64,000 nucleotides of DNA from Stylophora pistillata (taxonomy: Eukaryota): contig NW_019218038.1 of assembly GCF_002571385.2 (NCBI RefSeq), positions 251,274-315,273 on the forward strand, read 5' to 3'. This document shows positions 4,315 to 62,155 of the stretch, piece by piece. Every line of letters begins with the position of its first letter. The first letter of the stretch is position 1. A program made the translations under genes and the position numbers. Below the pieces are notes generated by a model. It had not been told where the DNA came from. It saw only the letters and a program-made list of their open reading frames with translations, and ran no database searches.

Positions 4315-6461
4315 TTATGCCATTCCAAAACATTTAATTTTCCCCAGAGTATGATATCCTTCCTCAGATCCTATAACGTCACCAAACCTGAGCTGTTTTA
4401 CTAGAAGAGTTGTCTTGTCAGTGCAAAGACCGCTGTCCTCACGCCATACTGCGTCATTCCTATCACAGTAGGGACTTAAAGATACAGGAACGCGGACGTC
4501 GCGAAAGAGAACCGGAAGTAAAATAACACCTGAGAGCTTCATTGCGCATGACCAAAAGTCAGATATGCTGCGTTGTTGCTGGCGACGGACGTCACTAGAG
4601 GGCTTTTCGCGTCGCTGATAACACGTGAGTAAATTGGTGGTCTTTTTGGTTTCTACAGACCTTTTAATTAACAGTACCTGTATTATTTTGGATGTTTAAG
4701 AATCTTCTTTGTTATTTTTTATTTAAAAAGTCGGTTGCTGAGTCATAATCATAAACAGCAGTGTAAATATAACACTGTAGTGTCAGTACAACCTAAACCA
4801 AAATGTGCAAAAATGGCTCAAATCTCGTTAAAACACAGCAGAATGGCAAGAAATTTAACACTAAGCAATCCCGGTAAAAACCTCTGTTCTGTGAATTAAT
4901 CATACATTGACTGATTTAATTTTCAGTTGCTGATCTCGGTTATAAATTACAGTTGGATCTAGCCGGGAATGGCTTCGAAGCCCAAGTAAAATCATGATCA
5001 TGTCAGAGTAGCGACAAGGGTAGGCAAATCGCTTGAGAAGGATACAAAGGCCTTCGGTTCCAGGACATACTGTTCCTTGATCTTATTTAAATATAGCAGG
5101 AATTTGCAGTGCATCTTCAAGGCAAGATGTGTGATGCTTCTCTACCCTTAAATTGGCTAAACACTCGGCTCCATTTTGGTCCCGGCAAAGAAAATTTCGA
5201 ATACTCTTGGTAAGGAAAGTCCAAATTATCCGACTTGTTCTCCTCATAAAGCAGCAAGAATTCTGCATCAGTAATAAAGCCCATTGCACGACTTATACAC
5301 AGCAGTTCTCGAGTTTCCCTGAAAGAAGCCATATTAAACTCGAAAAAATCGCCGCGTCGCTCGCAAACTGAAGAACCTTAACTTAATTTTCTCGCCACGA
5401 ACGCGGTGCACTCGACCCAGGCTCTCTTCGACGGTCGCGTACTTCAAGGCGTCCGCGTCCCCGTATCTTAAAGTCCCTAGTTACAGTGAAACCTGGCGTC
5501 TGCACAGGAGTTAGTCATCCCGCATGCGCACTTACCACTGATAGGTGATGCTCCACCCTAGTACGTCATCTTAGCAGAGTCACGTGACACCCACCATGCG
5601 TATCCTCCTCCCATCCCTCATAATAGCACTGAATGATGACATTCATATTTGATAAACTGTTCACAGTGTGAGGAGGCTCTGGTGAGACTCGCCAGCTGAG
5701 ACAGACTCGTTCCGGTGTAATGAATGTCACGTGAATAACACCCTCGATTATCACATCCTTTACACGCGTTCTACTTTCACTGTCGTGACCGATGACTGTT
5801 ACGCCAACTCTATTCCTCTCACTCATGTCGCAGTATACTGTGAAAGGTGCCAGTCCTCCGATCCAACGCCGTCCGGATCAATGACGTAATTTCTACTGAC
5901 TCTACTGACGTACTTTCTTATCACAAAACAAGACGTTGCAATAAAGGGAGAATTCATTTTGACTTTGGCTTCTAATGCTGTCAGACCATTGGTCGCTTTA
6001 CAAGTGTAAGATCTTTGCTGTGATTTCTTGCTGTTATTTACAATCCGAGTTCCTTTTTGTAGAACTGTGGCCTCAACAACAAGTGAAGACATGCCATCCA
6101 TTGTCCAGGTGACTGTAGTCACTAGATCACTCTCGGCCTGAAAATGAAAACGAACACTTGAACCAATCACAGGAGTGATTTCTTGAAGAGGACGGGCTTT
6201 GAACTTCAGAGGAGAAAATACCATGAGATGAGCAGTGTCTGTCGCTGATCCCAAAATATTCTCTGCCTTACAGATGTATATTCCACCATCCTTTCTCACC
6301 AAACTGTAGATCTTCCATGTTCCATTCCTCACTTCAGTCCTTTATTCTGGCAAACTACCCATTGACTTAGACCACGTGACTATTGGCCAAGTCTGACCAA
6401 CAGTATTGCCGGCAATGGTGACGTTTTGTTTCACTGGATGAATACAAAAGTTTAGGGAAGA
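4315..6461 (-). pseudogene. Ig-Ig + Caspr-type fibrinogen-like terminal exon, disrupted by stops, frameshifts and a Harbinger insertion
   Basis: CCACAG acceptor at 6462; Ig motifs DGGIYICKAEN and SYTCKATN; YVIDPDG, GVTVIGHDSE, WREDSG..TDKT.L.VKQLRFGD..EEGYHTLGKIKCFGMA*; in-frame TAA near 6342 and frameshifts. Confidence 0.8.
4470..5478 (-). mobile_element. Internally deleted PIF/Harbinger DNA transposon
   Basis: ~30-bp imperfect TIRs AGGGACTT(A/T)AAGATAC..., 3-bp TSD AGT (4467-4469 and 5479-5481); removal restores C-N-C-D codons. Transposase N-terminal relic MASFRETRELL...EFLLLYEENKSDNLDFPY...EGLCILLKRFAYPCRYSDMI at about 4990-5332. Confidence 0.85.
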
Positions 6462-9322: not shown

Positions 9323-10296
9323 TATTACGACCCCTGTAATTAGTTCTTAAGGTACTGTAGCTTAAGATCATAGATTTGATCAGTAAATAAATGTTGTTCC
9401 TTTAGTCTTGTAGCGACCAACACGTAAACTCAATCAGAAAGTTCCTGTTTAGTAGCTGTGTGGAAAACAGCTGGGTGTAAATTGACCCTCTTTCGAGGTA
9501 AAGATGACAGACTTGCCTGTGCTTGTTATAAAGGGAGTTTCAGTTTCGCAAGTATATTTAAGTATATAATTAGCACCACTGGTCAAAGGAGTTAATATCC
9601 CAGACAACTCCCTGATTAAATATCTTGTGTTCATACATAGCTGTAGAAAAAGAGAGGTGAGCAGTCGAGTCAGTATTAGCGTCATTCACCTCAAAAGCAC
9701 TCCACTTTCTTATCCTTAATTCACTTAACCTGCTTTCGCAAAACTGGAGGCCAGTAATTTAGGCTAACACATAACAGCCACAAGTTGCACTTAGCTGATC
9801 TCTGTTAGGCGCCTTACTCGCAGTCGGTCTCTTTGAATTATTCACTCACTTGATAATAAAACCATGCACCCTATGGGAGAAATAACTTAAACTACATAAA
9901 TATATATAATAGAACGGTTCATACTGTAGATTAAACGCAAAATTTAGCCCTAACATGCTTTTTCACGCAAAACTTAGACGGGTATATTCGCTTGGTCATG
10001 CTTGCATGCTCCCATTCTCGTAGACACAGAGACAAATGCATTAATTCTAAGTAGTGAATTAGACTTATATCACTCTGTTTAAAAATGATAACAATAAACG
10101 AAAACTAAATCCTTGAATTACGGAAAGGACGGTTATTATTAAAGTTGATGCGGGAAATTCGTAATTCTTGAACTTCATTGCTGACTTTGTTGAGATGGCA
10201 AACCCTGCTCAAGTTTCCCCCATAACTCCTTGCGCTCTTTTCGCATTTGATATACATCAATCATTTTGACTTACATGCAGCGTTTCCATTTATATC

Positions 10297-11214
10297 GGAC
10301 GACCACGGCGACGACCACGTGATGTTTGGCCTTGGGTTACCATTCGCAGTACATTTCAACATGGCTGTCTGACTTTCATCGACGGTCATTTCAACAGGTT
10401 ACTCTATCAGAGTTGGTGTTGAGAGAGAGTGGCCCGGCTTACCTTTAGCTCCCTTCTCTCCCGGTGGCCCTTGCAGTCCCATCGGACCAGGGTTACACGG
10501 TAATCCGACATCCCCCTTTATTCCCATCGACCAATAAGGTCCTATTGGTCCACGTTTACCAGGTAGCCCTCCTAGACCAGTTCTTCCGGGAGGACCCAGT
10601 CTCCCTCGGGTTCCTGGTCTTCTTCATCTTCCTCTGTTACCTTTTGGTCCTGCGCGGCAAAGTGTATAATTTTTCGCACAGATTTGGTTTTGTAGCAGAG
10701 TAAGCTCTAGTTTGATCAGCCTTTGTACAACAGAAGATGTTGGGGAAGAGTTTTGTTGTAAATTATCCCGTGTAAAGCGTTTCTTTCTCAATATGGCGTC
10801 CTGTCCGTCTGAAGATATCAAAGATTGGCAGTTTCCCATGTTCATTGGCATCATCATGTGTCATTTGAACAAAAACGCGCCTTAAACACTGATATAACCG
10901 ACTGGGAACGCGAGAATAGATGATTGGTAACATAGCTAAACTTACCACTGGTAACTTCTTCCTTTAGCTTCCTCGTATCGTCAAGTCGCCTACGAGCGTA
11001 ATTCTTTTATACCTTCCGTATGATCTCTGTCCCTATCTTATCACAGAACTTTGCTGAGTGCGATATCAGTAGATGATGTTTTATTTTTAGTTCCACGTTA
11101 ATCCACGCGACACAGCACTGACAAAAGAGACAACAGCAAGCGCCACCCGGAACACAAGCGCTCTAACAGCTGTGTTCTGTTCATTTGCTTTTGTGTTTTT
11201 CCATGTTGTTTCAT
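10297..11214 (-). pseudogene. Collagen-Ig gene copy A (exon 1 10946-11214; exon 2 about 10297-10810), frameshifted and truncated
   Basis: LERLCSGWRLLLSLL; GTAAG donor; RKKR furin site, LLQNQICAKNYTLCRAGPKG, degraded GXY, Ig start cut off at the 9820-10296 duplication. Confidence 0.75.
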
Positions 11215-12947
11215 TGTAACAGCATCCAGAAAGATATCTCAAATTCATAGACATACATCGACCAATGTATGTTAACTTTTGTGGAGACGATCAGCCGGCC
11301 CATGTAGAAGCTAGTACTTAGTTCAACTTAAGAGGCTCGTTCTGTTGTATGTGCTTCGATCGCCAATATAGTTACGCCAGTATACTTATACCTCGCGTAC
11401 TCGAGGGACTTTGGTTATTACGATGCCGATGTATTTTTCTGAGCAAACGTGAAACAGCAGTAAAGGCGGAAACGAGTCAATGCTTTAGTGTTACGGAAGG
11501 CTGATAATCATTTTAAAATCTTGCAGGGTCGGGTAAAGCAAAAATATATTTAATATATATAATTTATATAATATAATAATATATAATATATATTAATAAT
11601 ATATAAAAATATGATAATCAATAATAATATAATAATATATTTTTTGTGAACCTTTGACCTGCACGTCTCCAGAACTATTTTGACTGTTGTTCTTCATCTA
11701 CATTATTTCAAGGACTCTTTTCGATTCACCTGCTGCCAGCCTACGCGCATGACTTGAGGAAATCAGCTCCCCAGTTTCATGCAGTTGATTGTAAAGGATT
11801 ATTTGATTTAACTGATTTGAGCGGAACGTGACTGTATGGCAGACTTCTAATGTCATTCCATTTAGCGCTCCCTCCGATAAGTGTCCTCTTGTTTCGCTGA
11901 TACACACATACTTGAGTAATAAACATCTACAACCTAATGTGAGAGTCGAGAGACCCTCTAGAATGTAGGAAAATGACGCTTTGTAAAAATTAACAAGATT
12001 TTCTAATACGCGTTTATTTGATAGCGTTGGCTTGTTTGCTTCGTTTCCGCGTCAAAAAAGAACTCGCTACCCGGTAAATTTCTTATCATTCTAATTTCCT
12101 CCTCTTCTCGATAGAATTCAGACATTTTTGACCACTGGCCCGGAGAACAAAAGCTTTTTCTCTCGCGTACTGATCTTTTCAAAGTTATCGTAGACACTTT
12201 TAAGTATGCACTAAGTGGTGATCATGTCCTATGTCAAAGGACAATCTCACGAAAACTTTTCCACTGCGAGTTTGAAGTGATTAATTTTGAAATCAATTGT
12301 TTTAAAATTTCTAACAATTCAACTTCTCTCAATGTGAATTTTAGCACCTCTCTTGTTTTTATTTATTTTTTAGATGTTACATTTTTTTTATCCGTTGTGT
12401 TTATCTCAACCCTCGGCGATACAAGGAATGTGGATTTTTAATGATTTTACATAAATATCTGTCCTCTATGTATATTCCATGGTGTGCATATGTGATGAAT
12501 TTGGAAAACTGTAAATACTGGCACTTTCTCCCTATATACCCCGCGGAGAGGGAAAGTTTAGTCAAATGGCGATTCTCAGAACCCACAACCAACGTTCGGG
12601 ACTTTTCAAAGTTTGTTTATGCTGATACGTACTGATTAACACTGCCTAAGCATATACAGAAAATTGGTAGAAAAGATTATTAATACAATGCCAATTCATT
12701 AACTTGTCGTTTCGTACACCTTTTATTCAAGGTGTACCAGATGAAAATCTAATGAATACGATCGAACTAAAAGGTTTTCATACAAAAGAGGACCAGCCTC
12801 AGGGTTTTAGTCACTAAGCAACACTTACAAGTAAAATCAATATCGTGCAACGCATTATCAAGATTTCCAGCTGTGAAAAACAGGTGAATAGGCTATTTTC
12901 CAAACGGTCTGTAAAACTTATAATTAAGACTTTCTGGCTGCAGAAAA

Positions 12948-15903
12948 ATGTATCTAAACCGTGTTTTTCTAGCGTTTCTGTGTCTACACCTTCAATTTTT
13001 GGCTTCAAATGGTGGTATGTGTCGTGAAGAGAAATCCCAGCTCGGTTTCGCCCTTCTGAACTCTTCCTACAGCACTAAACAATCACCGCGCTACTCTGAC
13101 TGCGTAGAATCATGCGCGCTTGATCCTCAGTGCATGAGTTTTAATTTCTGGTGGGATAAGAAAATGTGTGATTTGAACGGTAAAGCTAGGGAACATAGTT
13201 GTTTGGCCTGCTTTGTGACCGATAAGTCATCCACTTACATGGGAATGGCGAGGTATCCAGGCTACCCAGGTAAAGTCAAAATTTTGAAAATAGTTAATCA
13301 CAAGATAAAGTATGCAACTCTATCAGAAACCATTGCGTTTCCCTATGTATCGTTAAACTAAACCATGCAGGTATTCTAATAAGCTAGATAAACATCTACG
13401 GTAACAACTTTGCTTTGGATCGGAGCCAACGCTTGACAGAGTCTCATTAGGGTGAAGGCTTTTACGGCTTGCGGTTAAAGTTTTGGCCAATTTACGGCCG
13501 TAACAGTTAACACCTTTCCTTTGGGATCACCAGAAACAATTTTACGGTTAATGTTTTTATAACTAACGGTTCAAAATTGTCAGTTTTTACACGTAACGGC
13601 TAAATCGCTTGGCTGTTTCATAATTACGGCTATCGGATAATCCCATTTGAGACCCAGGTATCAATATATCAGTATCAAGCGGAAAGCAAAACATTAATTT
13701 CAGATGAATAACCTTAAGTTGAAACGTTTTATGAACAAAATGACCCTAGTTGATGGGCAAGGATGGGGGATCTTTTTTATTCGCAAGTTTAATTCCCTGA
13801 AAATGAATCTGTTTTTTTTAGGAAACTTGTTAAAGGTTAAAAATCTCTCAAAGTTGATATCAAGTTCTAAATCGTAAACAGATATTAAAAGTAACTGACA
13901 TCAACTGGGAGATGTCACGTGTGTTGTTAGTTTCTCGGTCTTGGTATTACTATCAAGCTGTTGGTTGGAGCCTTATTTGAAAGGCTGGGATCTGAAATTA
14001 ATTTTTTTTCAATGTTTACCTGTAAAGAGTGATTCTCGGCGTCAATTGCATCGAAATAGCTCAACAGAGTAAACGAATAAACCCTAGCTAATATAACATC
14101 AAGCGATAACTCTTAAAACTAGACTTTTGTATCTGTGCCATCTAGCTCCATTCTAAATGAGTTAATTATTCAGTCATAGTTTGCTGATAAATTTTTTGCA
14201 ATTGTTCGTTAATCCGCGGGCAGTCGGCGCACACCGGCTATCAATAATTCTGCGCCTTTCGTTGCCGAGATCTCGATTGAAAAATGCCTTACATTTCCCT
14301 TTTAACTCAGTTGGGGAAAGAAGACGGTTTGATATCAGTTCAAGATACAACCCTCAACCTGATTGGTTGTAGTCAATGTGGCTGTTTGTTTGATAATGTC
14401 GTAATATGATAGAGAGAAGCTTAATAATAACCACCAATAAGGTCTCTCGGAACAAAAGCTCTCATGGGTGTCACAATACTCATCATGACAAACATTGAAA
14501 AGTGTAATAAACACGATTAGTTTTAGAAGTTGTTGTTCAAACAACGTCTATCACTAACGTGGCTTATTTTACACGGCCAGTGATCTTCCGCAAAAATTAA
14601 ATCATTACAAAATTAAGGGTCGACATTTTGAATATTTGGCGGTGAAAAATATCGTTCCTACATGCGCTACTCAACTTATAAAACACTAAGATGCCTACTG
14701 ATCTTAAATGATTAATGACTCGGGAATCCATAAATTCGTTAAGAGTTTAAACGACGCTTCTTTCAATGATAGATACTGCATTTTATCAGAAAATCCTAAT
14801 CCTGAGTTTCTAGAGTAAACACCACCGGCCAGGTACTTTAACACAGTTTGGCCATTAGCTCTGAGAAACAGTCTTTATAACCATTTCCAATTTAACCTGA
14901 GGTTTTTAACTAACATCCCAAGAGGCTTTATCGCATCATAGAGCCAGAAAAATGCATTCTATTGCTTTTATGACATAAGCAGTTGCATGCGGGCTCCATA
15001 ACCTGCTAAAGCATCCGCTTGAAAACTGAATAGACCAATCAGATGATGCGCACTATAATCATTATGTTAAAAAGATAAATATAAATGTCAAGTAGAAAGA
15101 TGTTTGGAGTTGCATTGTTTCGCTCTTTTCCTTAGATGGATTTGTAGTTGTTTGGATGTTCACCAACAGAATTATGTAGCTTACCAGGTTTTAACGTTGC
15201 AATGAATTTTTTATTCTAATCATCCTCTGATACACGCTAGTAAATTTTAAAATTAATGAAAAATATTCAATCCCCAGCGTTAGCGAGGTCCTGTAGCGCC
15301 TTGAAACAGGTAGACCCCTCAGCACAAACTGGCTTGTACGTGATTGACCCTGATGGCGAAGGAGGCTTCCCGCCTTTACTTAACGTCACCTGTGACATGG
15401 GTGACAAGAATGGAGTTGGCGTGACAGTCGTCAGTCACGACAGTGAAAGCAGAATGCTAGTGAAAGGATGTAATGGCCCAGGATGTCATTCGCGTGACAT
15501 TCAATACATAGGAGCGAGTCTGTCCCAGCTGGTGAGTCTAACTAGAGTCTCCTTACATTGTGAACAGTTTATCAAGTACGAGTGCCAATATTCGTCCATC
15601 GTATGGGAAAACAGAACATTCGCATGGTGGGTATCACGCGATGACATCAAGATGAATTACTGGGGAGGAGCCTCGCCTGGAAGAGGAGACCAAATCTGCG
15701 CATGCGGAATGAACAACACGTGTTCAAAACCCAACACTGTTTGTAACTGTGACAAAAATGACGGTGTTTTACGAGAAGACAGCGGACTCCTCACAGACAA
15801 GACAAGTCTTCCGGTTAAACAGCTGAGGTTTGGGGATACTGGAGAGGAAAACGAGAGAGGCTTCCATACATTAGGAAAGTTTAAGTGCTATGGCATGACT
15901 TAG
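12948..15903 (+). CDS. Two-exon secreted protein: signal peptide + PAN/apple + Caspr-type fibrinogen-like domain (exons 12948-13269 and 15278-15903, ~315 aa)
   Basis: Hydrophobic N-terminus; PAN pattern CVESCALDPQCMSFNF...CDLN; CCAG|GTAAAG donor and CCCCAG acceptor, both phase 1; YVIDPDG, VSHDSE, CEQFIKYEC, WWVSRD, YWGGA, CNCDKND, EDSG, LRFGD, GKFKCYG*. Confidence 0.85.
13438..13655. mobile_element. MITE-like element in the intron with TACGG(T/C)TA subrepeats
   Basis: Imperfect terminal IR GTCTCATTAGGG / CCCATTTGAGAC and internal repeated ACGG motifs. Confidence 0.45.
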
Positions 15904-17415: not shown

Positions 17416-18990
17416 TTATACGACTATCTCCTCTTCTGGTGATTGTGATAAGTAGACGAGCACGACACTGGGTCTGCGTACTTCACTTGTCGCCGCTAGC
17501 GGTACCGGTGTTTCGGTTTTATTGTTCTCATTTCCTTCCTGATTGTCTTCAGTAGTTTCTTGTATTGGGGAAGGAGGACGGTTTGACGTAAGCGAAAGCC
17601 GCCGAGACGTGCTTTCTGGAGCAGCTAAAGATAATACAGGACGAGCAAATGGTAAATGTGCTGTAGGATATGACGGTGAAACAGGCTGTCGTGTTGGACT
17701 TGATGGGGGGCCCCGTGCAAGGGGCGAAAGTGATGTCGAATTCGATAAATGGGGGGATACATGGTAATTTGGAGGTGGTAGTGATCTGTGGTGTGGCTGA
17801 TGGTAGGGTGCCATTGATGTGATCGCCGTAGCTTGTATTGCAGGAGGTGAAACTCGCCTGGCACGTGATGGAACAGGATAAATGGCGTTTTCTGATAAAA
17901 TTCTGCCAGTGGCTGGTAGAGATAATTGTTGACGTGGTTGGCTCGTCGCTACTTCATAACGTCTTATATTTTCAACGGGAAATTGCATTGCAACAGGGCG
18001 ACCAACCACCAGTCTCGGTACGTTAAGGTTCATGTTGTTGGTATCTCCCCCCGCTGATATCCCACCTGATGGGGATGGGGGACGAGACTGGTAAGCAGGG
18101 GGGCTCAGACATTGGCTGTCCTCTGACGCCGTCGATTCACGTCGGTTCCTTCTACCAAATACTCTGTCGTAAGCAGGTGGCGGGGTACCTCCGGGTAAAC
18201 TTGCTGATGGCCTATATGACTGGATTATCTGTCGTTGATATGGTGGAAGCATGGGAACTGAGTGCCGATCATGTTGACGAGGAGGAGCACGATTGGGGTC
18301 GAGTATAGTTCGTGGGAGTTCGGCTTCACTTCGTTGACGTTCGGGAGGATGAGTTGCATGTGATCTCCCAACAAGAGCAAGTTGGCGGTCGATGTATTCT
18401 CGCGTCATTCTAGACGAACTTAGAACCGAAGTTACTGGCGTTTCCAAGGCTTGATCGATAACTCGCCGTTCATCGTTGTAATGTCGCTCGCCGTCGCAAC
18501 GTCGTTCGCGATATATAATACGTTGAGGATTAATCCTTTCGCCTGAACTATTAGTAGATCGACTGAACGTTGCAGAATTATTTGTAGAGATCGTTGAACT
18601 AACTCCTCTTGAAAAAATCTCTGACGAGGCAAAGGCTAAAAACTCTTCTCGGCTAGGTCTGCATTGTTGCGGATCCCTTCTCGATTTCGAACGGTAGAAC
18701 TTGAAGTAAACTACACCCGACCACAAAAGCACAAAAATAAGCAATACTCCGAACCCAATTAGAGCGCCAGCACTCATCTGATCAGTGTCGCTTTTAGAGT
18801 TTTGAAAGTGTACAACAGCTATGATAATTATAGCAGTTACACACAAAATCATCAGCCAGCACACGATACAAACCCAGAAGATCTTTCTCCTTCGCATTGA
18901 GGCTAGTTCAGTAGAGTTTCGCCTGTCTGACAGTTCATTCCGTGCTTGAATTGAAGGCCCATCCTGGCCAGAAGATTGTCCAGTGCTCAT
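17416..18990 (-). CDS. Intronless two-TM protein with a long Pro/Ser/Arg-rich tail and PY motifs (524 aa)
   Basis: TM1 about aa 37-62, TM2 about aa 76-99; LPPY, PPAY twice, PPNY; 1.57-kb open frame; AGAAATG start context. Confidence 0.85.
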   Translation of the reverse strand: MSTGQSSGQDGPSIQARNELSDRRNSTELASMRRRKIFWVCIVCWLMILCVTAIIIIAVVHFQNSKSDTDQMSAGALIGFGVLLIFVLLWSGVVYFKFYRSKSRRDPQQCRPSREEFLAFASSEIFSRGVSSTISTNNSATFSRSTNSSGERINPQRIIYRERRCDGERHYNDERRVIDQALETPVTSVLSSSRMTREYIDRQLALVGRSHATHPPERQRSEAELPRTILDPNRAPPRQHDRHSVPMLPPYQRQIIQSYRPSASLPGGTPPPAYDRVFGRRNRRESTASEDSQCLSPPAYQSRPPSPSGGISAGGDTNNMNLNVPRLVVGRPVAMQFPVENIRRYEVATSQPRQQLSLPATGRILSENAIYPVPSRARRVSPPAIQATAITSMAPYHQPHHRSLPPPNYHVSPHLSNSTSLSPLARGPPSSPTRQPVSPSYPTAHLPFARPVLSLAAPESTSRRLSLTSNRPPSPIQETTEDNQEGNENNKTETPVPLAATSEVRRPSVVLVYLSQSPEEEIVV

Positions 18991-21865
18991 TTCTATCTTG
19001 AATCGCTAATCGTGTTTCACCCAGACTTGATCAACCGACTAAAAAGCTGTTTTTGCTCTCACTGAGGCTACGCGACCATTAATGCCGAAACAATGTCGGC
19101 AATTGTTTCTAGTTTGAAAGAACAACAGCTCCACCAATATTGCCCTCCTGTGAAAAACCAACTCACAAAACATCATTCTTGTGGCCAGCCCTTTTCTCGA
19201 TCATGTCCGGTGACGTGACAAGTAATTGAGCCCGCTATATATTGCAGTTTGCGTGCAACTTTATGGAGTCTCGAAAAACCTGGATTCATTCAACGATTTA
19301 CAGCCGACGTCATTTTATATGTTTGTGTTTTCTGATGTGACTGTTTAGCCTGTGTGAAAGAGCTTAACAGTCTAAAGAAATATTTCAAAATAAGCTGAGA
19401 CAAGAATCATTGTACCGAAATATTGGATCTGTGGTTAAGTTCAAGCCTCGGTGCTCCTGCAGTAAATTTTTAAATTCCTTTTGTTCCTTGACTAATCTAA
19501 TTCAATATCGTACCATTAAATTTATTGCTGTCTTTTCTAAAGATGGTTTCATCGTAAAATAGCACTCATCACGAAACGTATAGGTAGATGAAAAGAGAAA
19601 CTGGTCTAGAGCTTAGAGCTGTTCTTGATTACGATCTAAAATATGTCAAGACTTTAGTTTTTATCTGATTCAAAATATTGACAAATATTATATTGTTCTT
19701 GGGGGAAAAGAAGTTTTACTCGGTTAGTTTGCGTGTCTGGAATTATAACAACTTCCCGTGGTCCACTATGTGCAAGGCATCACCTTTATTCTCGTTACAA
19801 AAATGTGAATAATGAAAATTTTTCTTAAAGTAATTGATATAAAGAGAATGAAAAGGCAATTTAGCGAAAATTAAGAGCACTCAAAAGATCGAAGGGCACA
19901 GTTTTTCTAATGTATTTCAACACGTCAGTATTATCGTATATTCCGTTTTGAGGTTTGTTTTTTTATAAATGTTGGTTTAGCTGTTTCCTTGTCTTTCTTT
20001 TAAAACATTTCCTCTAGATTACAGCTTCTATACTGTTTTTGTCCAGTCGGACACGCCGTCAGTCACATGAAAGAGAACTTGTCAATCACTCGTATTGTAA
20101 AATGTCTAGTCGTCTTTTTATTCATGAACATAAAATAATTTATTCCGAAATTCCTTGGAAACTGATAAAATATCCTGGTTAGATTAATAGTAGTTAAAAG
20201 GTTTTCTTTCTGAAAACAGAAGACAATTAGTCTCATCTCAAAAGTGTAGAGATAAAAAGAAACCATAAGTAAATTACCTCAATAATTGGTTATCATTAAG
20301 ATTAGACATGTGTGTCTTTCTTGCGTCTAGTTAACAAGTTGCCTTAGTCTGATAGCTATAGTGGACAGCTTGTTCTCAGCCTTGCTCGAAAGCTGACAAG
20401 GGCGCTTGCATTGGTGAAAGACGCAAATGGAAAGAAAACATGAAGGGAAAAAACGTCCAATTTTTGTATCAGTCCTCTTCGCTATCATGGAGAGATAAAA
20501 AGTACTTTTCAGCCCAGAAGAAGTTCAACAGGATAGCATGACTCCTTGACTAGATTTTTTTTCCAAAGAAAAAACACACTGGTGCCTAATTGATCGATAA
20601 TGTCTAAGCACCATGTAATGATGATTTGGTTCAAGTGAGTGTGGACTTGTCCTCAGTAACGTCACTCACGACATCATCTCTACCGTTGTTTTGTCTCAAG
20701 TCCAAGAAAAATCTCAAGCTTGCGGTTTCAGTTTTAGATCGGTCCAAGATTCCTACTTTCTAATTGTAGTGTTTAAAGATGATGAGACAAATAAGAGCAC
20801 AGTTGATATTTCAAGAGAATTTTTGCATCATTTTGATGCTTGACCCTAGTTCCAACCTCAAGCAAAATTTCCTATCTACACTGAGAAATTTGCTGATAAA
20901 TAAAGAGTCGAGGATGTAGATTTTGCACACTACGGTACTTATAAACTGAATTTTGACCCCATAAATGACAGAATTCCCATTAAGGATAATCAGTAGCGAT
21001 GATGAGTCTAAATGGCGTACAATACGAAAGTAAAACTTTCTTTTGTGACTCCCGGGCTCCTTTGAGGTTTGAATCGTTAACAGGTTTTAATCTGGATTGT
21101 CTGGAATTCTTTACATTTCCTTTTTTCATTTGCGTGGGACTCAAAAACGTTCTAGACTATGTCTGTGTCTCTTTAGTATTGCCGTCTGGCGACAGAGTGA
21201 TATTGATTGTAGATTTTAAAATTGCGCGTTTCTAACACCGAAAACAATCATGATACTTGACAATGAGATATTTTTAGCCTCACAGAAACTGACAATGGAC
21301 GGAAGAGGGTCAAACTGAAAGGGCAGCGCGCGACAAACTGATTCTAGCCGCTCCTCCATTCCCTTCACATCCCCGCCCTTTTTATAGTAAACATAAAATC
21401 AATAATAAATTGGAAGGACCACACTTTTGTTATGAAGCTTTCTTCAGTTAGGAACTAAAAATAACGAATTACTCTCTCTCTCTCTCTCTCTCTTCTCCCC
21501 CCCCCCTACTCTCCCCTTCCCGTCGTTCTATCAACTCCTCCCTTCCCCTCCCCCCCAACATTCCGTCTAGACCTCGCTGAGCAATTAGCACGTAAGATTT
21601 TAGAATTACGCCTGATTACTGTTATTCTTCTTAAATTTCAAGTTCTTTATAAGCGAAAGTTAACAGAGACACAAAGAAGCATTAATCTTTCATCTGCCGG
21701 CCGCCTTACCATTAGTTTATTTCTTAAGGGCAAACTAGAATGTCGGAAAACATGGAAAATGATGTTGCTTTGATGAAGTGAGTGTTATCACCTTAAGCTG
21801 GCCACTGGTCTAAGTTTTAACCCATGGATGGTCTTGGTGATTGAATACTTGAATTGGTTGTTATC

Positions 21866-21870
<5 letters not shown>

Positions 21871-21924
<54 letters not shown>
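21871..21924 (+). repeat. (TAA)n microsatellite
   Basis: About 18 perfect units. Confidence 0.95.
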
Positions 21925-21926
<2 letters not shown>

Positions 21927-22987
21927 GACAAGTGAATTAGGAACACGTTATAAAAGTTTCGAGATTAACTTGACTAGTGACAGTTGTGGGAGAAGATCTT
22001 TCCAGGCTTAACATCCTTCGTTGCTAGTATACTCGGTGGTATTGTTCTAGGTGACAAATTACTCACAACAGATTCAACATAGGCGAGGCGGAACGCAACT
22101 TTGTTTTTGCGGTTTCAAAAGTCGGCTTATTTCCGTCACATGTGCGAAGGGGCCGCTAGCCGGTCCTTGAGTTGAAAAGCCGTAAGCTATTTGAAGCAAT
22201 CCACCGTGCCTTCATCTCCAGATTTTTGACAGGGAAATGGGAACTATAACTAAATGATAAACTGACAGAGTCATTTCAAAAAGGCCCTCTGACCTTTTGA
22301 TACCGAGAAACAAACGATTGGAAACATTTGAGACAAGATTTGATAGTGTGAAATATTGAGCAATATCACCCTGTGTACCAACTAAGAAATGAATTCAATT
22401 AGAAAAATGAAGAACCTTCAAATGACCTCATTTTAATCTTAAAAGCCGATTCTGCCCCTTAGCGAAGTGTGCAGGAAAAAACAAAGAACTTGAGAGGAGA
22501 ATTGGTAGGGATTTTGCTTCTCTATCATGCTCAGTCACATGATATCATTAGAATATGAGGAGGACTGGTAAAGAGATCACCCTGCCAAAAAGACTATGAA
22601 ATCGAAGTGAACTCTGTTCAGTGGCTCTTTTTTTTTTTTTTTTAAGCAAGCAGCATTTATTTGTCCATGGTTCACTTTTGAGGTGGAGGAAAATCTAGAT
22701 GGGGCACAGCTGGAGGCAGCCTTCCATTAAGAATTCTAGAATAAAACTTAAAGGGTAAATGATCAGGTATATATGAGAATACTGAGAAACACTTATCTGT
22801 TATAGTCATAATTGCTGAATCTAAACTTTGGTGAGATTATTCATTTATTCCATTACCTCTGAAAAAAAGTAGAAAAATACATATAACCAAATGTCAACAA
22901 ATGCACAAAAAATTCAAGCTCAAAGGTTGAGTCAAAAAAGTGCCTACAGCACAAAGCTAAGGATACACCTGGTATCTAGTACATATT

Positions 22988-23355
22988 ATTATATATTAGA
23001 CTTATGAAAACTCTGATTGGTCGAGAGCATACAGTCAATATGCAATAGTGTTTGAAGTTGACATGATAACCCAACATGTGCAGATGGGTGTCCATGTCGA
23101 GTTCAAAGTCTGCCTAGTTTCCAAGCCCCCAGTCCATTTAGTGTTCTTAAACTTTCGCAAACTCAGCAAGAAGTGTCTTCTTTTGCTGATTGTTTACAAA
23201 ATGTGAAATAAAACAATTATTTAATTTTGTTTTTGCACGATGTCATGAATTATTAAACCTTGTGTCTGTTTTATCTTCTTCAGCCTTTGGCCTTGCAGAT
23301 AACCCAGACCTCTGCATTTATAATCCATGATATCATGCTCAACCTAGTAACTACT
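22988..23355. mobile_element. Degenerate Crypton-like arm + hairpin element
   Basis: CTCTGATTGG near one end followed by an imperfect hairpin (CATGAATTAT...ATAATCCATG); same layout as the 31215 and 56490 elements. Confidence 0.45.
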
Positions 23356-24142
23356 TAATACTAACCTGCCATTGTGTCTGTTTTGTTCAGACATGATTTT
23401 TCCTTAATAAGGAAATGCCCAATCTTTAACGCAGTTTTCCTAGTACTAAATAAATAAATACATATATATATATATATATATAAATTTTAAAAATTTGCGA
23501 GGATGGACAACTTCTGACGTAAAACGTCTTTGCTCAGAAGAAAATCTTGGTTATTTAATCAATCAACCAAGCTTTCTCTGAACATTTTACATAATTAAAA
23601 TGAGCCACAAGACTCAGCCCTATGGTTATGTTGGTAACAAATATATAAACATCCTAACCTTTACAATGAAATACCCTATTCAAAATACGACCTTATCTAA
23701 ATATCTTTGTTACAATTGCCACTTAACAAAGTAGATATCAATTATGTCACATGTTTAACAGGAAGTCTTCCTTATGAATTTTCCACAAATTGTTTCATAA
23801 TTATCTTTGTCTTGTTGAGGTTGTTTCAAGGCCAATACTCAGTCTGCACTGCTTAATCTGACTGGCATGGAATGGCCCACAAAAGTATTTAAATCAGTTG
23901 AAAAGTTAACTGACAGCAAAACTCAGACATGTTTATGTCCTAAAGGATTGGTTTAAAAAAATCATAATCTAAGTAAAATTCCATTATGTAATATTATGCT
24001 GACAATTTAAGATTACAGTTGAGATTTGTTACCTGAAAGTAAAGTACCCAGAGCAATTAGTTCCCTGATCCTTTCTTCCATTAATTGTAATTTCTAGGGG
24101 AAAAAAACTAAGAAAACTACCCCACACTTTCAAGATGTGATT

Positions 24143-61576: not shown

Positions 61577-62155
61577 TCACACTTCACTTGATACTGTTCC
61601 TGATGCGACAGTTTCGTAAGATGGCGGCGATAAGTTAGCATCCGCTAACATTTCGTCATCTGTGTAACATGGCGGTGGGTCACACTGAGCCTGTGTCCTG
61701 GTGTCATGCGTATCATTCGTTGTTACCTCCTCATAAGAAGGAGGGTAACCTAAGATTCTCGTCAAAAGAAAGTTTAATTCTCTTCTTGATGTCGATAAAC
61801 CTCTTGTTTGAGCCTCGCTGTTATCCATCTGTCCCTCGCGAAGCAGCAACTCGATGTATTCGACACTGCGTGTCAATGGACTTTCGTTTCCTTCCGTTGT
61901 ATTCTCTAACCCACTTGCTCTCTTTTTAATGTAACGTATACCAATAAAACAAAGTCCAGCCAACAATCCGAAACAACACATTGTATAACCTCCTGTTTTC
62001 ATATGCGAGCTGTTATTTGTCACTCCAACTACAACCATAAGGATTCCGCATAGAATGAAAACAACGATAGCAACTGCTGTCTTATACAGGCGGGACGAGC
62101 CTATCAATGACCGCCTATGGTAGCCGTGGTACCAAACTTCACTGAGTTCTTGCAT
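61577..62155 (-). CDS. Intronless two-TM hairpin protein with PY motifs and a PDZ-type end (~192 aa)
   Basis: TM1 AVAIVVFILCGILMVVVG, TM2 GGYTMCCFGLLAGLCFIGI, YIKKR; PPSYEEV, PPCY, PPSYETV; C-terminal SEV. Confidence 0.85.
   Translation of the reverse strand: MQELSEVWYHGYHRRSLIGSSRLYKTAVAIVVFILCGILMVVVGVTNNSSHMKTGGYTMCCFGLLAGLCFIGIRYIKKRASGLENTTEGNESPLTRSVEYIELLLREGQMDNSEAQTRGLSTSRRELNFLLTRILGYPPSYEEVTTNDTHDTRTQAQCDPPPCYTDDEMLADANLSPPSYETVASGTVSSEV

What the first reader, a model, noticed from the sequence alone, without database searches (positions are those of the whole stretch)
17416..62155. Cluster of seven intronless two-TM hairpin membrane-adaptor genes
Seen: seven single-exon ORFs (17416-, 33360-, 37501+, 40324+, 42603-, 48158-, 61577-) share one plan: short N-terminus, no signal peptide, two closely spaced hydrophobic helices, juxtamembrane Cys or basic residues, and a disordered tail. 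All have intact frames although the DNA between them is full of decayed repeats, and they show no obvious nucleotide similarity to each other. Inference: an old, selected paralog array of small membrane adaptors that annotation would probably call unrelated uncharacterized proteins.
Basis: partly seen in the sequence, partly recalled or inferred. Interest (0 to 1): 0.85.

Follow-up and report, generated by a model that had tools for sequence, protein, structure and literature searches.

The report
Conserved coral two-pass membrane gene cluster
Seven small intron-free genes for two-helix membrane proteins lie side by side in a stony-coral genome and keep their order in other corals; four carry conserved PPxY tags of the kind that recruit NEDD4-type ubiquitin ligases, but they form at least two old orphan families, not one proven family.

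Summary
All seven ORFs exist at the stated places, and each has two hydrophobic helices joined by a 6-16 residue loop. About 0.01 such ORFs are expected by chance per window. None touches an assembly gap.

They are real genes. Each has orthologs in other scleractinians. One gap-free foreign contig keeps the order G-F-E-D-C-B-A. dN/dS is 0.1-0.5 for six of them and 0.4-0.8 for D. Stranded RNA reads cover C and E on the correct strand, with no splice joints.

"One paralog array" is only partly supported. Profile comparisons link B-D (90% probability) and, more weakly, B-C, E-F, E-G and A-F. The B/C/D group and the A/E/F/G group match each other no better than reversed controls.

A, E, F and G have disordered cytosolic tails. 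Their [P/L]PxY motifs are invariant in every ortholog examined. The best reading is that they are membrane adaptors that recruit WW-domain (NEDD4-type) ligases. This is inferred, not shown.

B, C and D lack PY motifs. They have invariant cysteines next to the membrane, acidic tails, and in C and D a C-terminal valine. Their role is unknown.

No member reaches a Pfam threshold. The resemblance to TMEM252/TMEM51-type proteins is one of architecture only. Interest is moderate.

The parts
17416..18990 (-). Gene A: 524-aa two-pass membrane protein with a 430-residue disordered cytosolic tail. It has three invariant PY motifs (window residues 248, 271, 297) and an invariant C-terminal E-I-[IV]-V.
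   Evidence: ORF. Helices at about residues 41-60 and 75-94. 25 orthologs at 38-85% identity, including Oculina, Desmophyllum, Montipora and Acropora. PY motifs kept in 25/25. C-terminal Val in 25/25.
33360..33812 (-). Gene B: 150-aa two-pass protein with no PY motif. The second helix plus an N-F-C-D-A-C-G-x-x-C stretch is invariant. The acidic tail has an invariant F-x-D-L-x-x-L-G-P motif.
   Evidence: ORF. 19 orthologs, mean column identity 62%. dN/dS 0.13-0.22. AF2 helices 15-56 and 62-89. Single copy in its own genome.
37501..37860 (+). Gene C: 119-aa two-pass protein with no PY motif. It has a C-L-L-C-G-H-x-C-D stretch at the end of helix 2, a short basic tail and a hydrophobic C-terminus ending in Val.
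   Evidence: ORF. Orthologs in 5 foreign loci at 46-73%. dN/dS 0.25-0.5. Stranded RNA reads and polyA contigs run colinear over 37400-39150 on the gene's strand without joints.
40324..40722 (+). Gene D: 132-aa two-pass protein with no PY motif, paralog of B. It has an acidic tail and C-terminal T-x-V in 3 of 4 complete orthologs. It evolves fastest of the seven.
   Evidence: ORF. Orthologs in 5 foreign loci at 38-49%. hhalign B-D probability 90%, reversed control 0.2%. Core permutation z 5.7. dN/dS 0.4-0.8. Its own-strand expression is not shown.
42603..43139 (-). Gene E: 178-aa two-pass protein. It has G-x6-G in helix 1, an R-rich stretch after helix 2, and an invariant P-P-S-Y-E-E-A near the C-terminus.
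   Evidence: ORF. Orthologs L002 and L005 at 40-44%. PY kept in 3/3. Minus-strand RNA covers 41340-43112 without canonical joints. Single copy.
48158..48868 (-). Gene F: 236-aa two-pass protein (251 aa if the TTG at 48913 is used). An invariant C-D-L-L-R-R-x-G-C-G-W follows helix 2. It has one LPxY and three PPxY motifs and a C-terminal [DE]-F-V.
   Evidence: ORF. 23 homologs at 41-99%. Alignment invariants. All 4 motifs kept in 20/20. AF2 helices 18-45 and 49-76. Single copy.
61577..62155 (-). Gene G: 192-aa two-pass protein. It has G-x6-G in helix 1, a basic stretch after helix 2, and three invariant PY motifs (PPSY, PPCY, PPSY) in the tail.
   Evidence: ORF. Orthologs L005 and L003 at 58-62%. 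PY kept in 3/3. A profile search of 1.84 billion representatives found only 10 hits. Sub-threshold TMEM252 tail hits in 4/4 orthologs. Single copy.
37400..39150 (+). Transcribed span of gene C: CDS plus a 3' UTR of about 1.3 kb. The RNA contigs extend about 780 nt further upstream of 37400, which was not examined.
   Evidence: X22 stranded reads (first mate on the minus strand only) and X5 and X12 polyA contigs (tables 2 and 8).
41340..43150 (-). Transcribed span of gene E: CDS plus a 3' UTR of about 1.2 kb that contains a roughly 350-bp interspersed repeat at 41774-42123.
   Evidence: X22 reads with first mate on the plus strand, and X5 and X12 contigs. Repeat copy number.

Best explanation
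The window holds a microsyntenic cluster of seven real, single-coding-exon genes. By what these searches could see, it is restricted to scleractinian corals. Each gene encodes a small two-pass (helical hairpin) membrane protein with both ends in the cytosol.

The genes fall into at least two old paralog groups.

Group 1 is A, E, F and G. A G-x6-G packing motif lies in helix 1 of E, F and G, and a basic stretch follows helix 2. The tail is long and disordered. Its only strongly conserved elements are [P/L]PxY motifs, mostly in the extended form PPxYxx-hydrophobic. A and F also have a C-terminal valine. The most likely mechanism has three parts. The hairpin anchors the protein and probably contacts a client membrane protein through its conserved small-residue faces. 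The PY motifs dock the WW domains of NEDD4-family HECT ligases, which the genome encodes. The ligase then ubiquitinates the adaptor or its client and directs endocytic or lysosomal sorting. This is how NDFIP1/2, Bsd2, Rcr1, Commissureless and LAPTM4/5 work.

Group 2 is B, C and D. It has a conserved proline in helix 1, G-x6-G in helix 2, an [N/H]-x-[C/A]-[D/N] stretch with nearby cysteines (probable palmitoylation sites), and short acidic or basic tails without PY motifs. C and D often end in valine. The role of this group is unknown. The near-invariant helices of B point to a specific partner inside the membrane.

Shown: the ORFs, the topology plan, conservation, synteny, purifying selection, transcription of C and E, motif conservation.

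Inferred: cytosolic orientation, WW/NEDD4 binding, client recognition, palmitoylation.
For: - Non-chance: 0.01 hairpin ORFs expected against 6-7 seen.
- Orthologs of every gene exist in other corals. The order G-F-E-D-C-B-A is kept on one foreign contig (L005 plus L008). Partial orders are kept in L002, L003 (Desmophyllum) and L010.
- dN/dS is below 1 for all seven.
- Stranded RNA covers C and E without joints.
- Group links: hhalign B-D 90% against 0.2% reversed, C against B+D 28% against 0.5%, E-F 67% against 29%. Within-segment permutation z: B-D 5.7, E-F 5.2, B-C 4.1, E-G 3.3, A-F 3.1, F-G 2.6.
- PY motifs: A has 3 motifs in 25/25 orthologs, F 4 in 20/20, E 1 in 3/3, G 3 in 3/3. They are enriched over shuffled tails (P 0.02 to below 0.0002).
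- K+R residues are concentrated on the N-flank and after helix 2 and are sparse in the loop, which supports N-in/C-in.
- The genome encodes WW+HECT ligases, for example five WW exons next to HECT exons on contig C595.
- Tails are disordered in the AF2 models.
- C-terminal Val: A 25/25, F 19/20, C 5/6, D 3/4 complete tails.
- That PY motifs bind NEDD4-family WW domains, and that small membrane PY adaptors work this way, is established knowledge (e.g. PMC2824488, PMC12101832, PMC7401822, PMC2064599).
Against: - No binding evidence: the one complex prediction gave no verdict.
- PY motifs also bind other WW proteins (YAP, WWOX). Most of them here also fit YxxPhi endocytic signals or, when phosphorylated, SH2 sites, so the reader of the motif is not settled.
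- B, C and D have no PY motif, so 'adaptor' is unsupported for three of the seven.
- Group 1 links are modest. Reversed-profile controls reach 29-43% probability. The permutation null destroys helix periodicity and may inflate z.
- E and G profiles rest on only three sequences each.
- D's own-strand transcription is not shown, and its dN/dS reaches 0.8.
- Topology rests on hydropathy, charge bias and AF2 helices, not on a dedicated predictor.
- The restriction to Scleractinia rests on searches of limited sensitivity. Only G had an exhaustive HMMER search.
Confidence: 0.55

Rival explanations
1. One reading: all seven genes, and possibly an eighth just outside the window, descend from one ancestral hairpin gene by tandem duplication. 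Groups 1 and 2 would then be ancient branches of a single family that have diverged beyond sequence recognition.
For: Seven adjacent genes share the same plan where 0.01 is expected. All have a single coding exon. N-terminal lengths (22-44 residues) and loop lengths (6-16) are similar. A G-x6-G motif occurs in one helix of B, C, D, E, F and G. There are cross-group hints: C-G z 3.7 and D-E z 2.6. C-terminal Val recurs in both groups. An eighth two-pass ORF with a PPSY tail and a C-terminal V-V lies 13 kb past G.
Against: The merged B/C/D profile against A/E/F/G scores 53% against 49% for the reversed control, and 59% against 67% when A is left out. 13 of 21 pairs are not above the permutation null. 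The G-x6-G motif sits in different helices in the two groups. Own-genome profile searches retrieve only the query gene itself.
Confidence: 0.35
2. The PY-like motifs are not NEDD4-docking sites. They would act mainly as tyrosine-based sorting signals (YxxPhi, bound by AP-2) or as phosphotyrosine docking sites of the Y-E-E-[VI] type for SH2 domains. Group 1 would then be palmitoylated scaffold adaptors of the LAT/PAG kind, or simply cargo with endocytic signals.
For: Most motifs read PPxY followed by x-x-V/F/I, for example Y-E-E-V, Y-D-F-V, Y-A-E-F, Y-D-R-V and Y-E-T-V. F has invariant cysteines next to the membrane. That YxxPhi and pYEEI are recognised motifs is my own background knowledge, not tested here.
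Against: The prolines at -3 and -2 are as invariant as the tyrosine (PPPY in 20/20 F and 24/25 A orthologs). Neither YxxPhi nor SH2 binding requires them; class I WW binding does. Two to four PY motifs per tail is typical of ligands for multi-WW ligases. The readings do not exclude each other: the ENaC-type PPxYxxL motif does both.
Confidence: 0.2
3. The ORFs are not independent genes. They would be chance ORFs, pseudogenes, or exons of larger multi-pass membrane genes.
For: D has weak, ambiguous expression and dN/dS up to 0.8. In one polyA library a single 5.2-kb contig spans C and D. The Desmophyllum annotation fuses the G tail to F.
Against: Every ORF runs Met-to-stop colinear with its orthologs across species whose synonymous sites are saturated. 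Strands differ within the cluster. There are no canonical splice joints in 37400-43300. Chance expectation is 0.01. The Desmophyllum fusion is a gene-model artefact: complete separate G and F ORFs exist in L003 and L005.
Confidence: 0.03

Closest known systems
NDFIP1/NDFIP2 (and yeast Bsd2): small multi-pass membrane adaptors and activators of NEDD4-family ligases
   Same: They are small integral membrane proteins. Their only conserved cytosolic elements are two or three PPxY/LPxY motifs, with no other domain. The proposed logic is the same: anchor in the membrane, dock WW domains, ubiquitinate a client.
   Different: NDFIPs have three helices and carry their PY motifs in the N-terminal cytosolic part. 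A, E, F and G have two helices and C-terminal PY tails. There is no sequence match in the Pfam scan. Ligase binding is not shown here.
Vertebrate two-pass orphan families TMEM252 (PF15664), TMEM51 (PF15345), TMEM139, TMEM61 and TMEM174
   Same: They share the overall plan of a short N-terminus, a two-helix hairpin and a disordered C-tail. The language-model atlas places G nearest to clusters of these families (scores 0.80-0.95). The G tail gives a sub-threshold match to the tail half of the TMEM252 profile in 4 of 4 orthologs.
   Different: All Pfam scores are below the gathering threshold (13.6-23.2 bits against 27) and cover only profile positions 69-128, not the hairpin. An exhaustive HMMER search with the G profile found no such protein at E 0.001 or better. 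The vertebrate genes are not known to be clustered; that is my own knowledge, not tested. The resemblance is one of architecture or motifs, and homology is not shown.
Single-pass or four-pass PY adaptors: Commissureless/PRRG4, yeast Rcr1/Rcr2, LAPTM4/LAPTM5
   Same: They are membrane-anchored with cytosolic PY motifs that recruit NEDD4/Rsp5 to sort the adaptor and its client to endosomes or lysosomes (PMC12101832, PMC7401822, PMC2064599, PMC3214061).
   Different: The number of helices differs (1 or 4) and the sequences are unrelated. Only a chance-level Pfam RCR hit was seen for G (E 0.2).
Two-pass hairpin regulators with a C-terminal PDZ ligand (TMEM88 type) and PIRT, TMEM230/134, TMEM72: a comparison for B, C and D
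   Same: They are small two-helix hairpins with short cytosolic tails. C and D mostly end in hydrophobic-x-V or T-x-V, which fits PDZ ligands or C-terminal-valine ER-export signals. Weak Pfam hits point to these families (B to TMEM230/134 at E 0.035, C to PIRT at 0.089, D to TMEM72 at 0.007).
   Different: All hits are far below threshold and differ for each gene. The atlas gave nothing above chance for B. The TMEM88 comparison is from memory and was not tested.

Membership tests
   Only B-D is clear (90% against 0.2%). B-C, E-F, E-G, A-F, F-G, C-G and D-E exceed a permutation null (z 2.6-5.2); 13 of 21 pairs do not. B/C/D against A/E/F/G is equal to the reversed control.
   Order G-F-E-D-C-B-A on foreign contig ctg21012 (L005 plus L008). 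Partial orders in L002, L003 and L010.
   Nei-Gojobori dN/dS, in pairs with dS below about 1.1 for most genes (above that for some E and F pairs): B 0.13-0.22, C 0.25-0.49, D 0.37-0.79, E 0.2-0.5, F 0.28-0.41, G 0.24-0.37.
   C and E: strand-consistent RNA reads and polyA contigs. D: low coverage and ambiguous strand.
Membrane PY-motif adaptors of NEDD4-family ligases (functional class) | One or more [P/L]PxY motifs conserved across orthologs in an otherwise variable region | tested here: met
   A 3 motifs in 25/25, F 4 in 20/20, E 1 in 3/3, G 3 in 3/3. Enriched over shuffled tails. Not met for B, C and D, which have none.
Membrane PY-motif adaptors of NEDD4-family ligases (functional class) | Motifs face the cytosol | tested here: inconclusive
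   The positive-inside charge bias favours N-in/C-in. No dedicated topology predictor or experiment was available.
Membrane PY-motif adaptors of NEDD4-family ligases (functional class) | Physical binding to WW domains of a NEDD4-family ligase | tested here: inconclusive
   The genome encodes WW+HECT genes. A complex prediction of one WW exon with the F tail gave no verdict. Biochemistry is needed.
NDFIP family | Three transmembrane helices with PY motifs in the N-terminal cytosolic region, and a sequence match to the family | tested here: not met
   There are two helices and the PY motifs are C-terminal. No NDFIP hit in Pfam-A scans at E 1 or better.
TMEM252 (PF15664) | Whole-protein score at or above Pfam's gathering threshold (27 bits) | tested here: not met
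   G and its orthologs score 19.8, 13.6, 23.2 and 16.2 bits.
TMEM252 (PF15664) | Match extends over the two-helix hairpin | tested here: not met
   The matches cover profile positions 69-128 of 139, the tail only.
TMEM252 (PF15664) | Reverse search with the G profile retrieves family members | tested here: not met
   10 hits in 1.84 billion representatives. Nine are G-like sequences or fragments. One is a 1,246-aa protein with no Pfam family.

The most novel reading that the evidence does not exclude
The locus would be a coral-lineage invention. One ancestral hairpin gene expanded hundreds of millions of years ago into a fixed array of seven or eight single-exon adaptors. Each hairpin would recognise a different client membrane protein, for example ion transporters used in calcification or at the symbiosome. 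The PY members would deliver clients to NEDD4-type ligases. The PY-less members (B, C, D) would act as competing or protecting partners. The whole locus would then be a dedicated, co-inherited surface-protein turnover toolkit with no counterpart outside stony corals.
Probability: 0.1. Interest if true: 0.7.

Novelty: new variant of a known kind. Interest (0 to 1): 0.4.

Why it matters
Coral genomes hold many 'dark' genes that respond to stress but have no assignable function. This work gives seven of them, in one conserved locus, a concrete anatomy. For four it gives a directly testable mechanism: PPxY tails that should bind the WW domains of coral NEDD4/ITCH-type ligases. If confirmed, the cluster would show that corals evolved their own set of membrane ubiquitin-ligase adaptors, parallel to NDFIP, Commissureless and Rcr1. 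It would also offer handles for asking which transporters or receptors corals regulate by ubiquitin-dependent sorting. The negative result matters too. The shared two-helix plan does not prove a single family, so annotation pipelines should not merge the seven on architecture alone.

Tried and rejected
1. Complex prediction of a single-exon WW domain from the ITCH-like gene on G000:C595 (L021:328-432:-) with F residues 196-236. The score was 0.04 against a mark of 0.34, so no verdict. It is not evidence either way.
2. Own-genome searches with F (sequence and profile) and with the B, G and E profiles. Each found only itself. The tool's first-look filter is too coarse to test weak paralogy, so the result shows only that each gene is single copy.
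3. Atlas search for B: best score 0.83, at chance level.
4. Scan of JGI metagenome contigs with the E alignment: 553 pattern matches, none confirmed.
5. Literature searches for TMEM252/TMEM51 with PPxY, for a coral-specific transmembrane tandem cluster, and a text search of PMC8509885 for TMEM proteins. Nothing relevant to these genes.
6. Look-up of the Oculina F ortholog P0005: not on record.
7. The Acropora-type locus of A plus or minus 10 kb (L022): no B, C or D within reach, so synteny at A's end is unverified there.
8. Raw pairwise BLAST and phmmer among the seven: weak hits only, against a 7-sequence database, so the E-values mean little.
9. Eighth ORF H against each family by hhalign: nothing above the reversed control.
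10. Fold searches were not run. A two-helix hairpin with pLDDT 55 or lower would give meaningless matches.

No contig looked human, no N run was filled, and read laying was given 5,901 letters.

Full report
WHAT IS THERE. The window is part of a 440-kb contig of a 398-Mb stony-coral assembly (G000:C254:251274-315273). The named homologs are all scleractinian: Oculina, Desmophyllum, Montipora and Acropora. Each has a hydrophilic N-terminus of 22-44 residues, two strongly hydrophobic 19-21 residue segments separated by 6-16 residues, and a tail of 29-430 residues. AlphaFold2 models built on ortholog alignments show two long helices in B (15-56, 62-89) and in F (18-45, 49-76), with pLDDT 70-83 in the helices and below 50 in the tails.

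CHANCE AND GAPS. In 200 Markov simulations of the window, the mean number of ATG-ORFs of 100 aa or more with such a hairpin was 0.01 (maximum 1), against 6-7 observed. The N runs flagged by the scan (31603-31634, 58637-58712) and a further one at 46678-46683 are intergenic. No frame of the seven depends on them, and I did not fill them. Two ORFs that read through N runs (46465-46938, 58545-58997) are artefacts. The two intergenic stretches I sampled (56900-57700, 41700-42150) are interspersed repeats with at least 40 copies each. Within 40 kb on either side there is no further hairpin ORF of this kind except one described under 'seen in passing'.

THEY ARE REAL, OLD, SELECTED GENES.
- F has 23 homologs at 41-99% identity, B has 19 and A has 25.
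- C, D, E and G orthologs were found by tblastn in the DNA around foreign F and B orthologs.
- One foreign contig (ctg21012; loci L005 plus L008, with no N in the stretches checked) carries G, F, E, D, C, B and A in the window's order.
- L002 carries F, a recent F duplicate, E, D and C.
- The Desmophyllum scaffold (L003) carries G, F, a broken E and D.
- L010 carries D, C, B and then the same Kelch gene as the window.
- A, B and F orthologs also share contigs in three further assemblies.
- D lies on the opposite relative strand in some species, so there was at least one local inversion.
- Nei-Gojobori dN/dS, mostly from pairs with unsaturated dS, is 0.13-0.22 (B), 0.25-0.49 (C), 0.37-0.79 (D), 0.2-0.5 (E), 0.28-0.41 (F) and 0.24-0.37 (G).
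- Each of B, E, F and G is single copy in its own genome.

TRANSCRIPTION. Twelve polyA RNA-seq runs from several studies hold about half the sampled words of 37400-43300. I laid one stranded raw-read run and three contig sets on the 5,901 bases.
- Gene C: reads with the first mate on the minus strand cover 37400-39150 continuously. PolyA contigs are colinear there, giving a 3' UTR of about 1.3 kb. The contigs extend about 780 nt upstream of the stretch laid.
- Gene E: reads with the first mate on the plus strand cover 41340-43112.
- No canonical splice joint was found in the stretch. The single listed skip (42666-42805) has non-canonical ends, one low-depth contig and a 28-base side.
- Gene D: only one or two raw reads, in the orientation of E rather than of D, plus low-depth contigs of unknown strand. 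D's own expression is therefore not shown.

ONE FAMILY OR SEVERAL?
- Raw pairwise comparisons are weak, and there is no DNA similarity.
- With ortholog alignments, full-length hhalign gives B-D 90% probability (E 1.4e-6) against 0.2% for a reversed-profile control.
- Next are E-F 67% (control 29%), A-F 51% (8%), B-C 20% (1%) and E-G 18% (0.4%).
- Reversed controls reach 43% elsewhere, so only B-D is safe by that test.
- On the hairpin core I used a null that shuffles columns within each helix, loop and flank. Against it, B-D (z 5.7), E-F (5.2), B-C (4.1), C-G (3.7), E-G (3.3), A-F (3.1), F-G (2.6) and D-E (2.6) stand out. Thirteen pairs do not.
- C against the merged B+D profile gives 28% against 0.5% reversed. 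Merged B/C/D against merged A/E/F/G gives 53% against 49% reversed.
- The aligned cores make the groups visible. B, C and D share a proline in helix 1, a G-x6-G in helix 2 and an [N/H]-x-[C/A]-[D/N] stretch with nearby cysteines. B and D also share an acidic tail motif of the type T-x-[FV]-x-D-L-x-E.
- E, F and G share G-x6-G at the end of helix 1, a polar loop and a basic stretch after helix 2.
- I conclude there are two paralog groups, B/C/D and A/E/F/G, with A the least secure member. A common origin of the two groups is plausible from the shared plan and position but is not shown.

WHAT THE TAILS SAY.
- In otherwise poorly conserved, disordered tails these motifs are invariant. Three of A's four are kept in 25/25 orthologs, all four of F's in 20/20, E's in 3/3 and G's three in 3/3.
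- They are enriched over shuffled tails (P from 0.02 to below 0.0002).
- Most have the extended form PPxY-x-x-hydrophobic.
- Lysine and arginine concentrate before helix 1 and after helix 2 and are rare in the loop. This places both ends in the cytosol.
- PY motifs are the standard ligands of the WW domains of NEDD4-family HECT ligases (PMC2824488). Small membrane proteins whose only conserved cytosolic feature is a set of PY motifs act as ligase adaptors: NDFIP (PMC12720080), Commissureless (PMC12101832), Rcr1 (PMC7401822) and LAPTM5 (PMC2064599).
- The genome encodes such ligases. For example, five WW exons lie next to HECT exons on contig C595, and there are further WW+HECT pairs on C71 and C126.
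- My best explanation is therefore that A, E, F and G are membrane PY adaptors. The binding itself is inferred. The one complex prediction I ran returned no verdict.
- A further shared feature is a C-terminal valine: A 25/25 (E-I-[IV]-V), F 19/20 ([DE]-F-V), C 5/6 and D 3 of 4 complete tails (T-x-V). It fits a PDZ ligand or a C-terminal-valine ER-export signal. That reading is from general knowledge and is untested.
- B, C and D have no PY motif. B's second helix and the following cysteine-rich stretch are invariant in 19 orthologs, which points to a specific partner in the membrane and probable palmitoylation.

COMPARISON WITH KNOWN FAMILIES.
- No protein reaches any Pfam gathering threshold.
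- G and three orthologs give sub-threshold hits (13.6-23.2 bits against 27) to the tail half (positions 69-128 of 139) of TMEM252.
- The language-model atlas places G near clusters labelled TMEM252, TMEM51/TMEM139, TMEM61 and TMEM174, all two-pass orphans.
- An exhaustive HMMER search of 1.84 billion representatives with the G profile returned only ten proteins. Nine are G-like sequences or fragments. The tenth is a 1,246-aa protein with no Pfam family.
- The resemblance to TMEM252-type proteins is therefore one of plan and motifs, and membership is not met.
- NDFIP membership is not met either: NDFIPs have three helices and N-terminal PY motifs, and no sequence match was found.
- B has no atlas neighbour above chance.

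VERDICT. It is right in spirit about 'adaptors' for four genes. It is unproven for 'one paralog array'. I rate the finding a new variant of a known kind: membrane PY-motif adaptors here take a two-pass, C-tail form, in a conserved, apparently coral-restricted locus with a PY-less sister group. Interest is moderate.

SEEN IN PASSING.
- An eighth single-ORF two-pass gene lies 13 kb beyond the window's right end. It has a Pro/Gln/Tyr-rich tail, a P-P-S-Y-E motif and a C-terminal V-V.
- A single-exon BTB-BACK-Kelch gene with a neighbouring decayed fragment lies inside the cluster.
- One polyA library has a 5.2-kb contig spanning C and D.

Noticed in passing
outside the window: L019:1292-1978 (+) = G000:C254:326565-327251, about 13 kb past gene G: An eighth ORF (228 aa) with the same general plan. 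It has two hydrophobic helices with a longer, cysteine-bearing loop of about 33 residues. Its tail is rich in Pro, Gln and Tyr, carries a P-P-S-Y-E motif near the end, and finishes in V-V. It gives a sub-threshold Pfam Neurensin/TMEM74 hit (23.6 bits against 27.7). It shows no profile similarity to A-G above the reversed control.
   Followed up: partly
window 24143-25867 (-) and 26451-26852 (-): A single-ORF BTB-BACK-Kelch (KLHL-type, Cullin-3 adaptor-like) gene of 574 aa sits between A and B. A decayed fragment of a second copy, with the BACK domain only, lies 600 bp away. The same gene follows B in the closer relative L010. It is absent from the B-A interval of L008, so it looks like a lineage-specific insertion into the cluster.
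   Followed up: partly
window 37400-41803: In one polyA RNA-seq run (X1) a single 5,183-nt contig of mean word depth 203 is colinear with the genome across C, the C-D spacer and D, and ends at a repeat. The cause could be read-through transcription, DNA carry-over or an assembly effect; this is unexplained.
   Followed up: no
window 41774-42123 and 39828-39860: A roughly 350-bp interspersed element with at least 40 genomic copies at 87-94% identity and internal inverted segments lies in the 3' UTR region of gene E. It is very deeply covered in RNA libraries, with many reads running off into unlike sequence. A second short multi-copy patch lies at 39828-39860.
   Followed up: partly
window 56900-57700 (also 50966-51289, 30592-30927, 58545-58997): Fragments of retrotransposon-like ORFs. 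Two hit Pfam ALKBH8_N near or at its cut-off (20.3 and 21.8 bits against 21). The 56900-57700 stretch has many partial copies at 80-99% identity across the genome.
   Followed up: partly
L002:699-1469 and L002:5645-6415: In one other coral, F is tandemly duplicated: two 256-aa copies 4.9 kb apart, with dS 0.13 and dN/dS 0.41. The locus therefore still duplicates occasionally.
   Followed up: partly
L003 (Desmophyllum pertusum MU827309), 9707-14102 and 18680-19354: The deposited gene model OS493_015695 joins the tail of the G ortholog to the F ortholog. F there changes frame about residue 129, and the E ortholog is split over three frames. These are either real decay or assembly errors.
   Followed up: no
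window 5823-6224 (-), 12948-13361 (+), 15256-15903 (+): To the left of the cluster are exon-like ORFs with an Ig I-set domain, a PAN domain and a weak fibrillar-collagen C-terminal match. A collagen-like G-x-y ORF lies just upstream of the window. These mark the cluster's left boundary.
   Followed up: no
outside the window: window+66636 to +67406 (L015): A 256-aa ORF with six hydrophobic segments, resembling a rhodopsin-type GPCR exon, lies between G and the eighth two-pass ORF. Solute-carrier-like exons follow at +89 to +98 kb.
   Followed up: no
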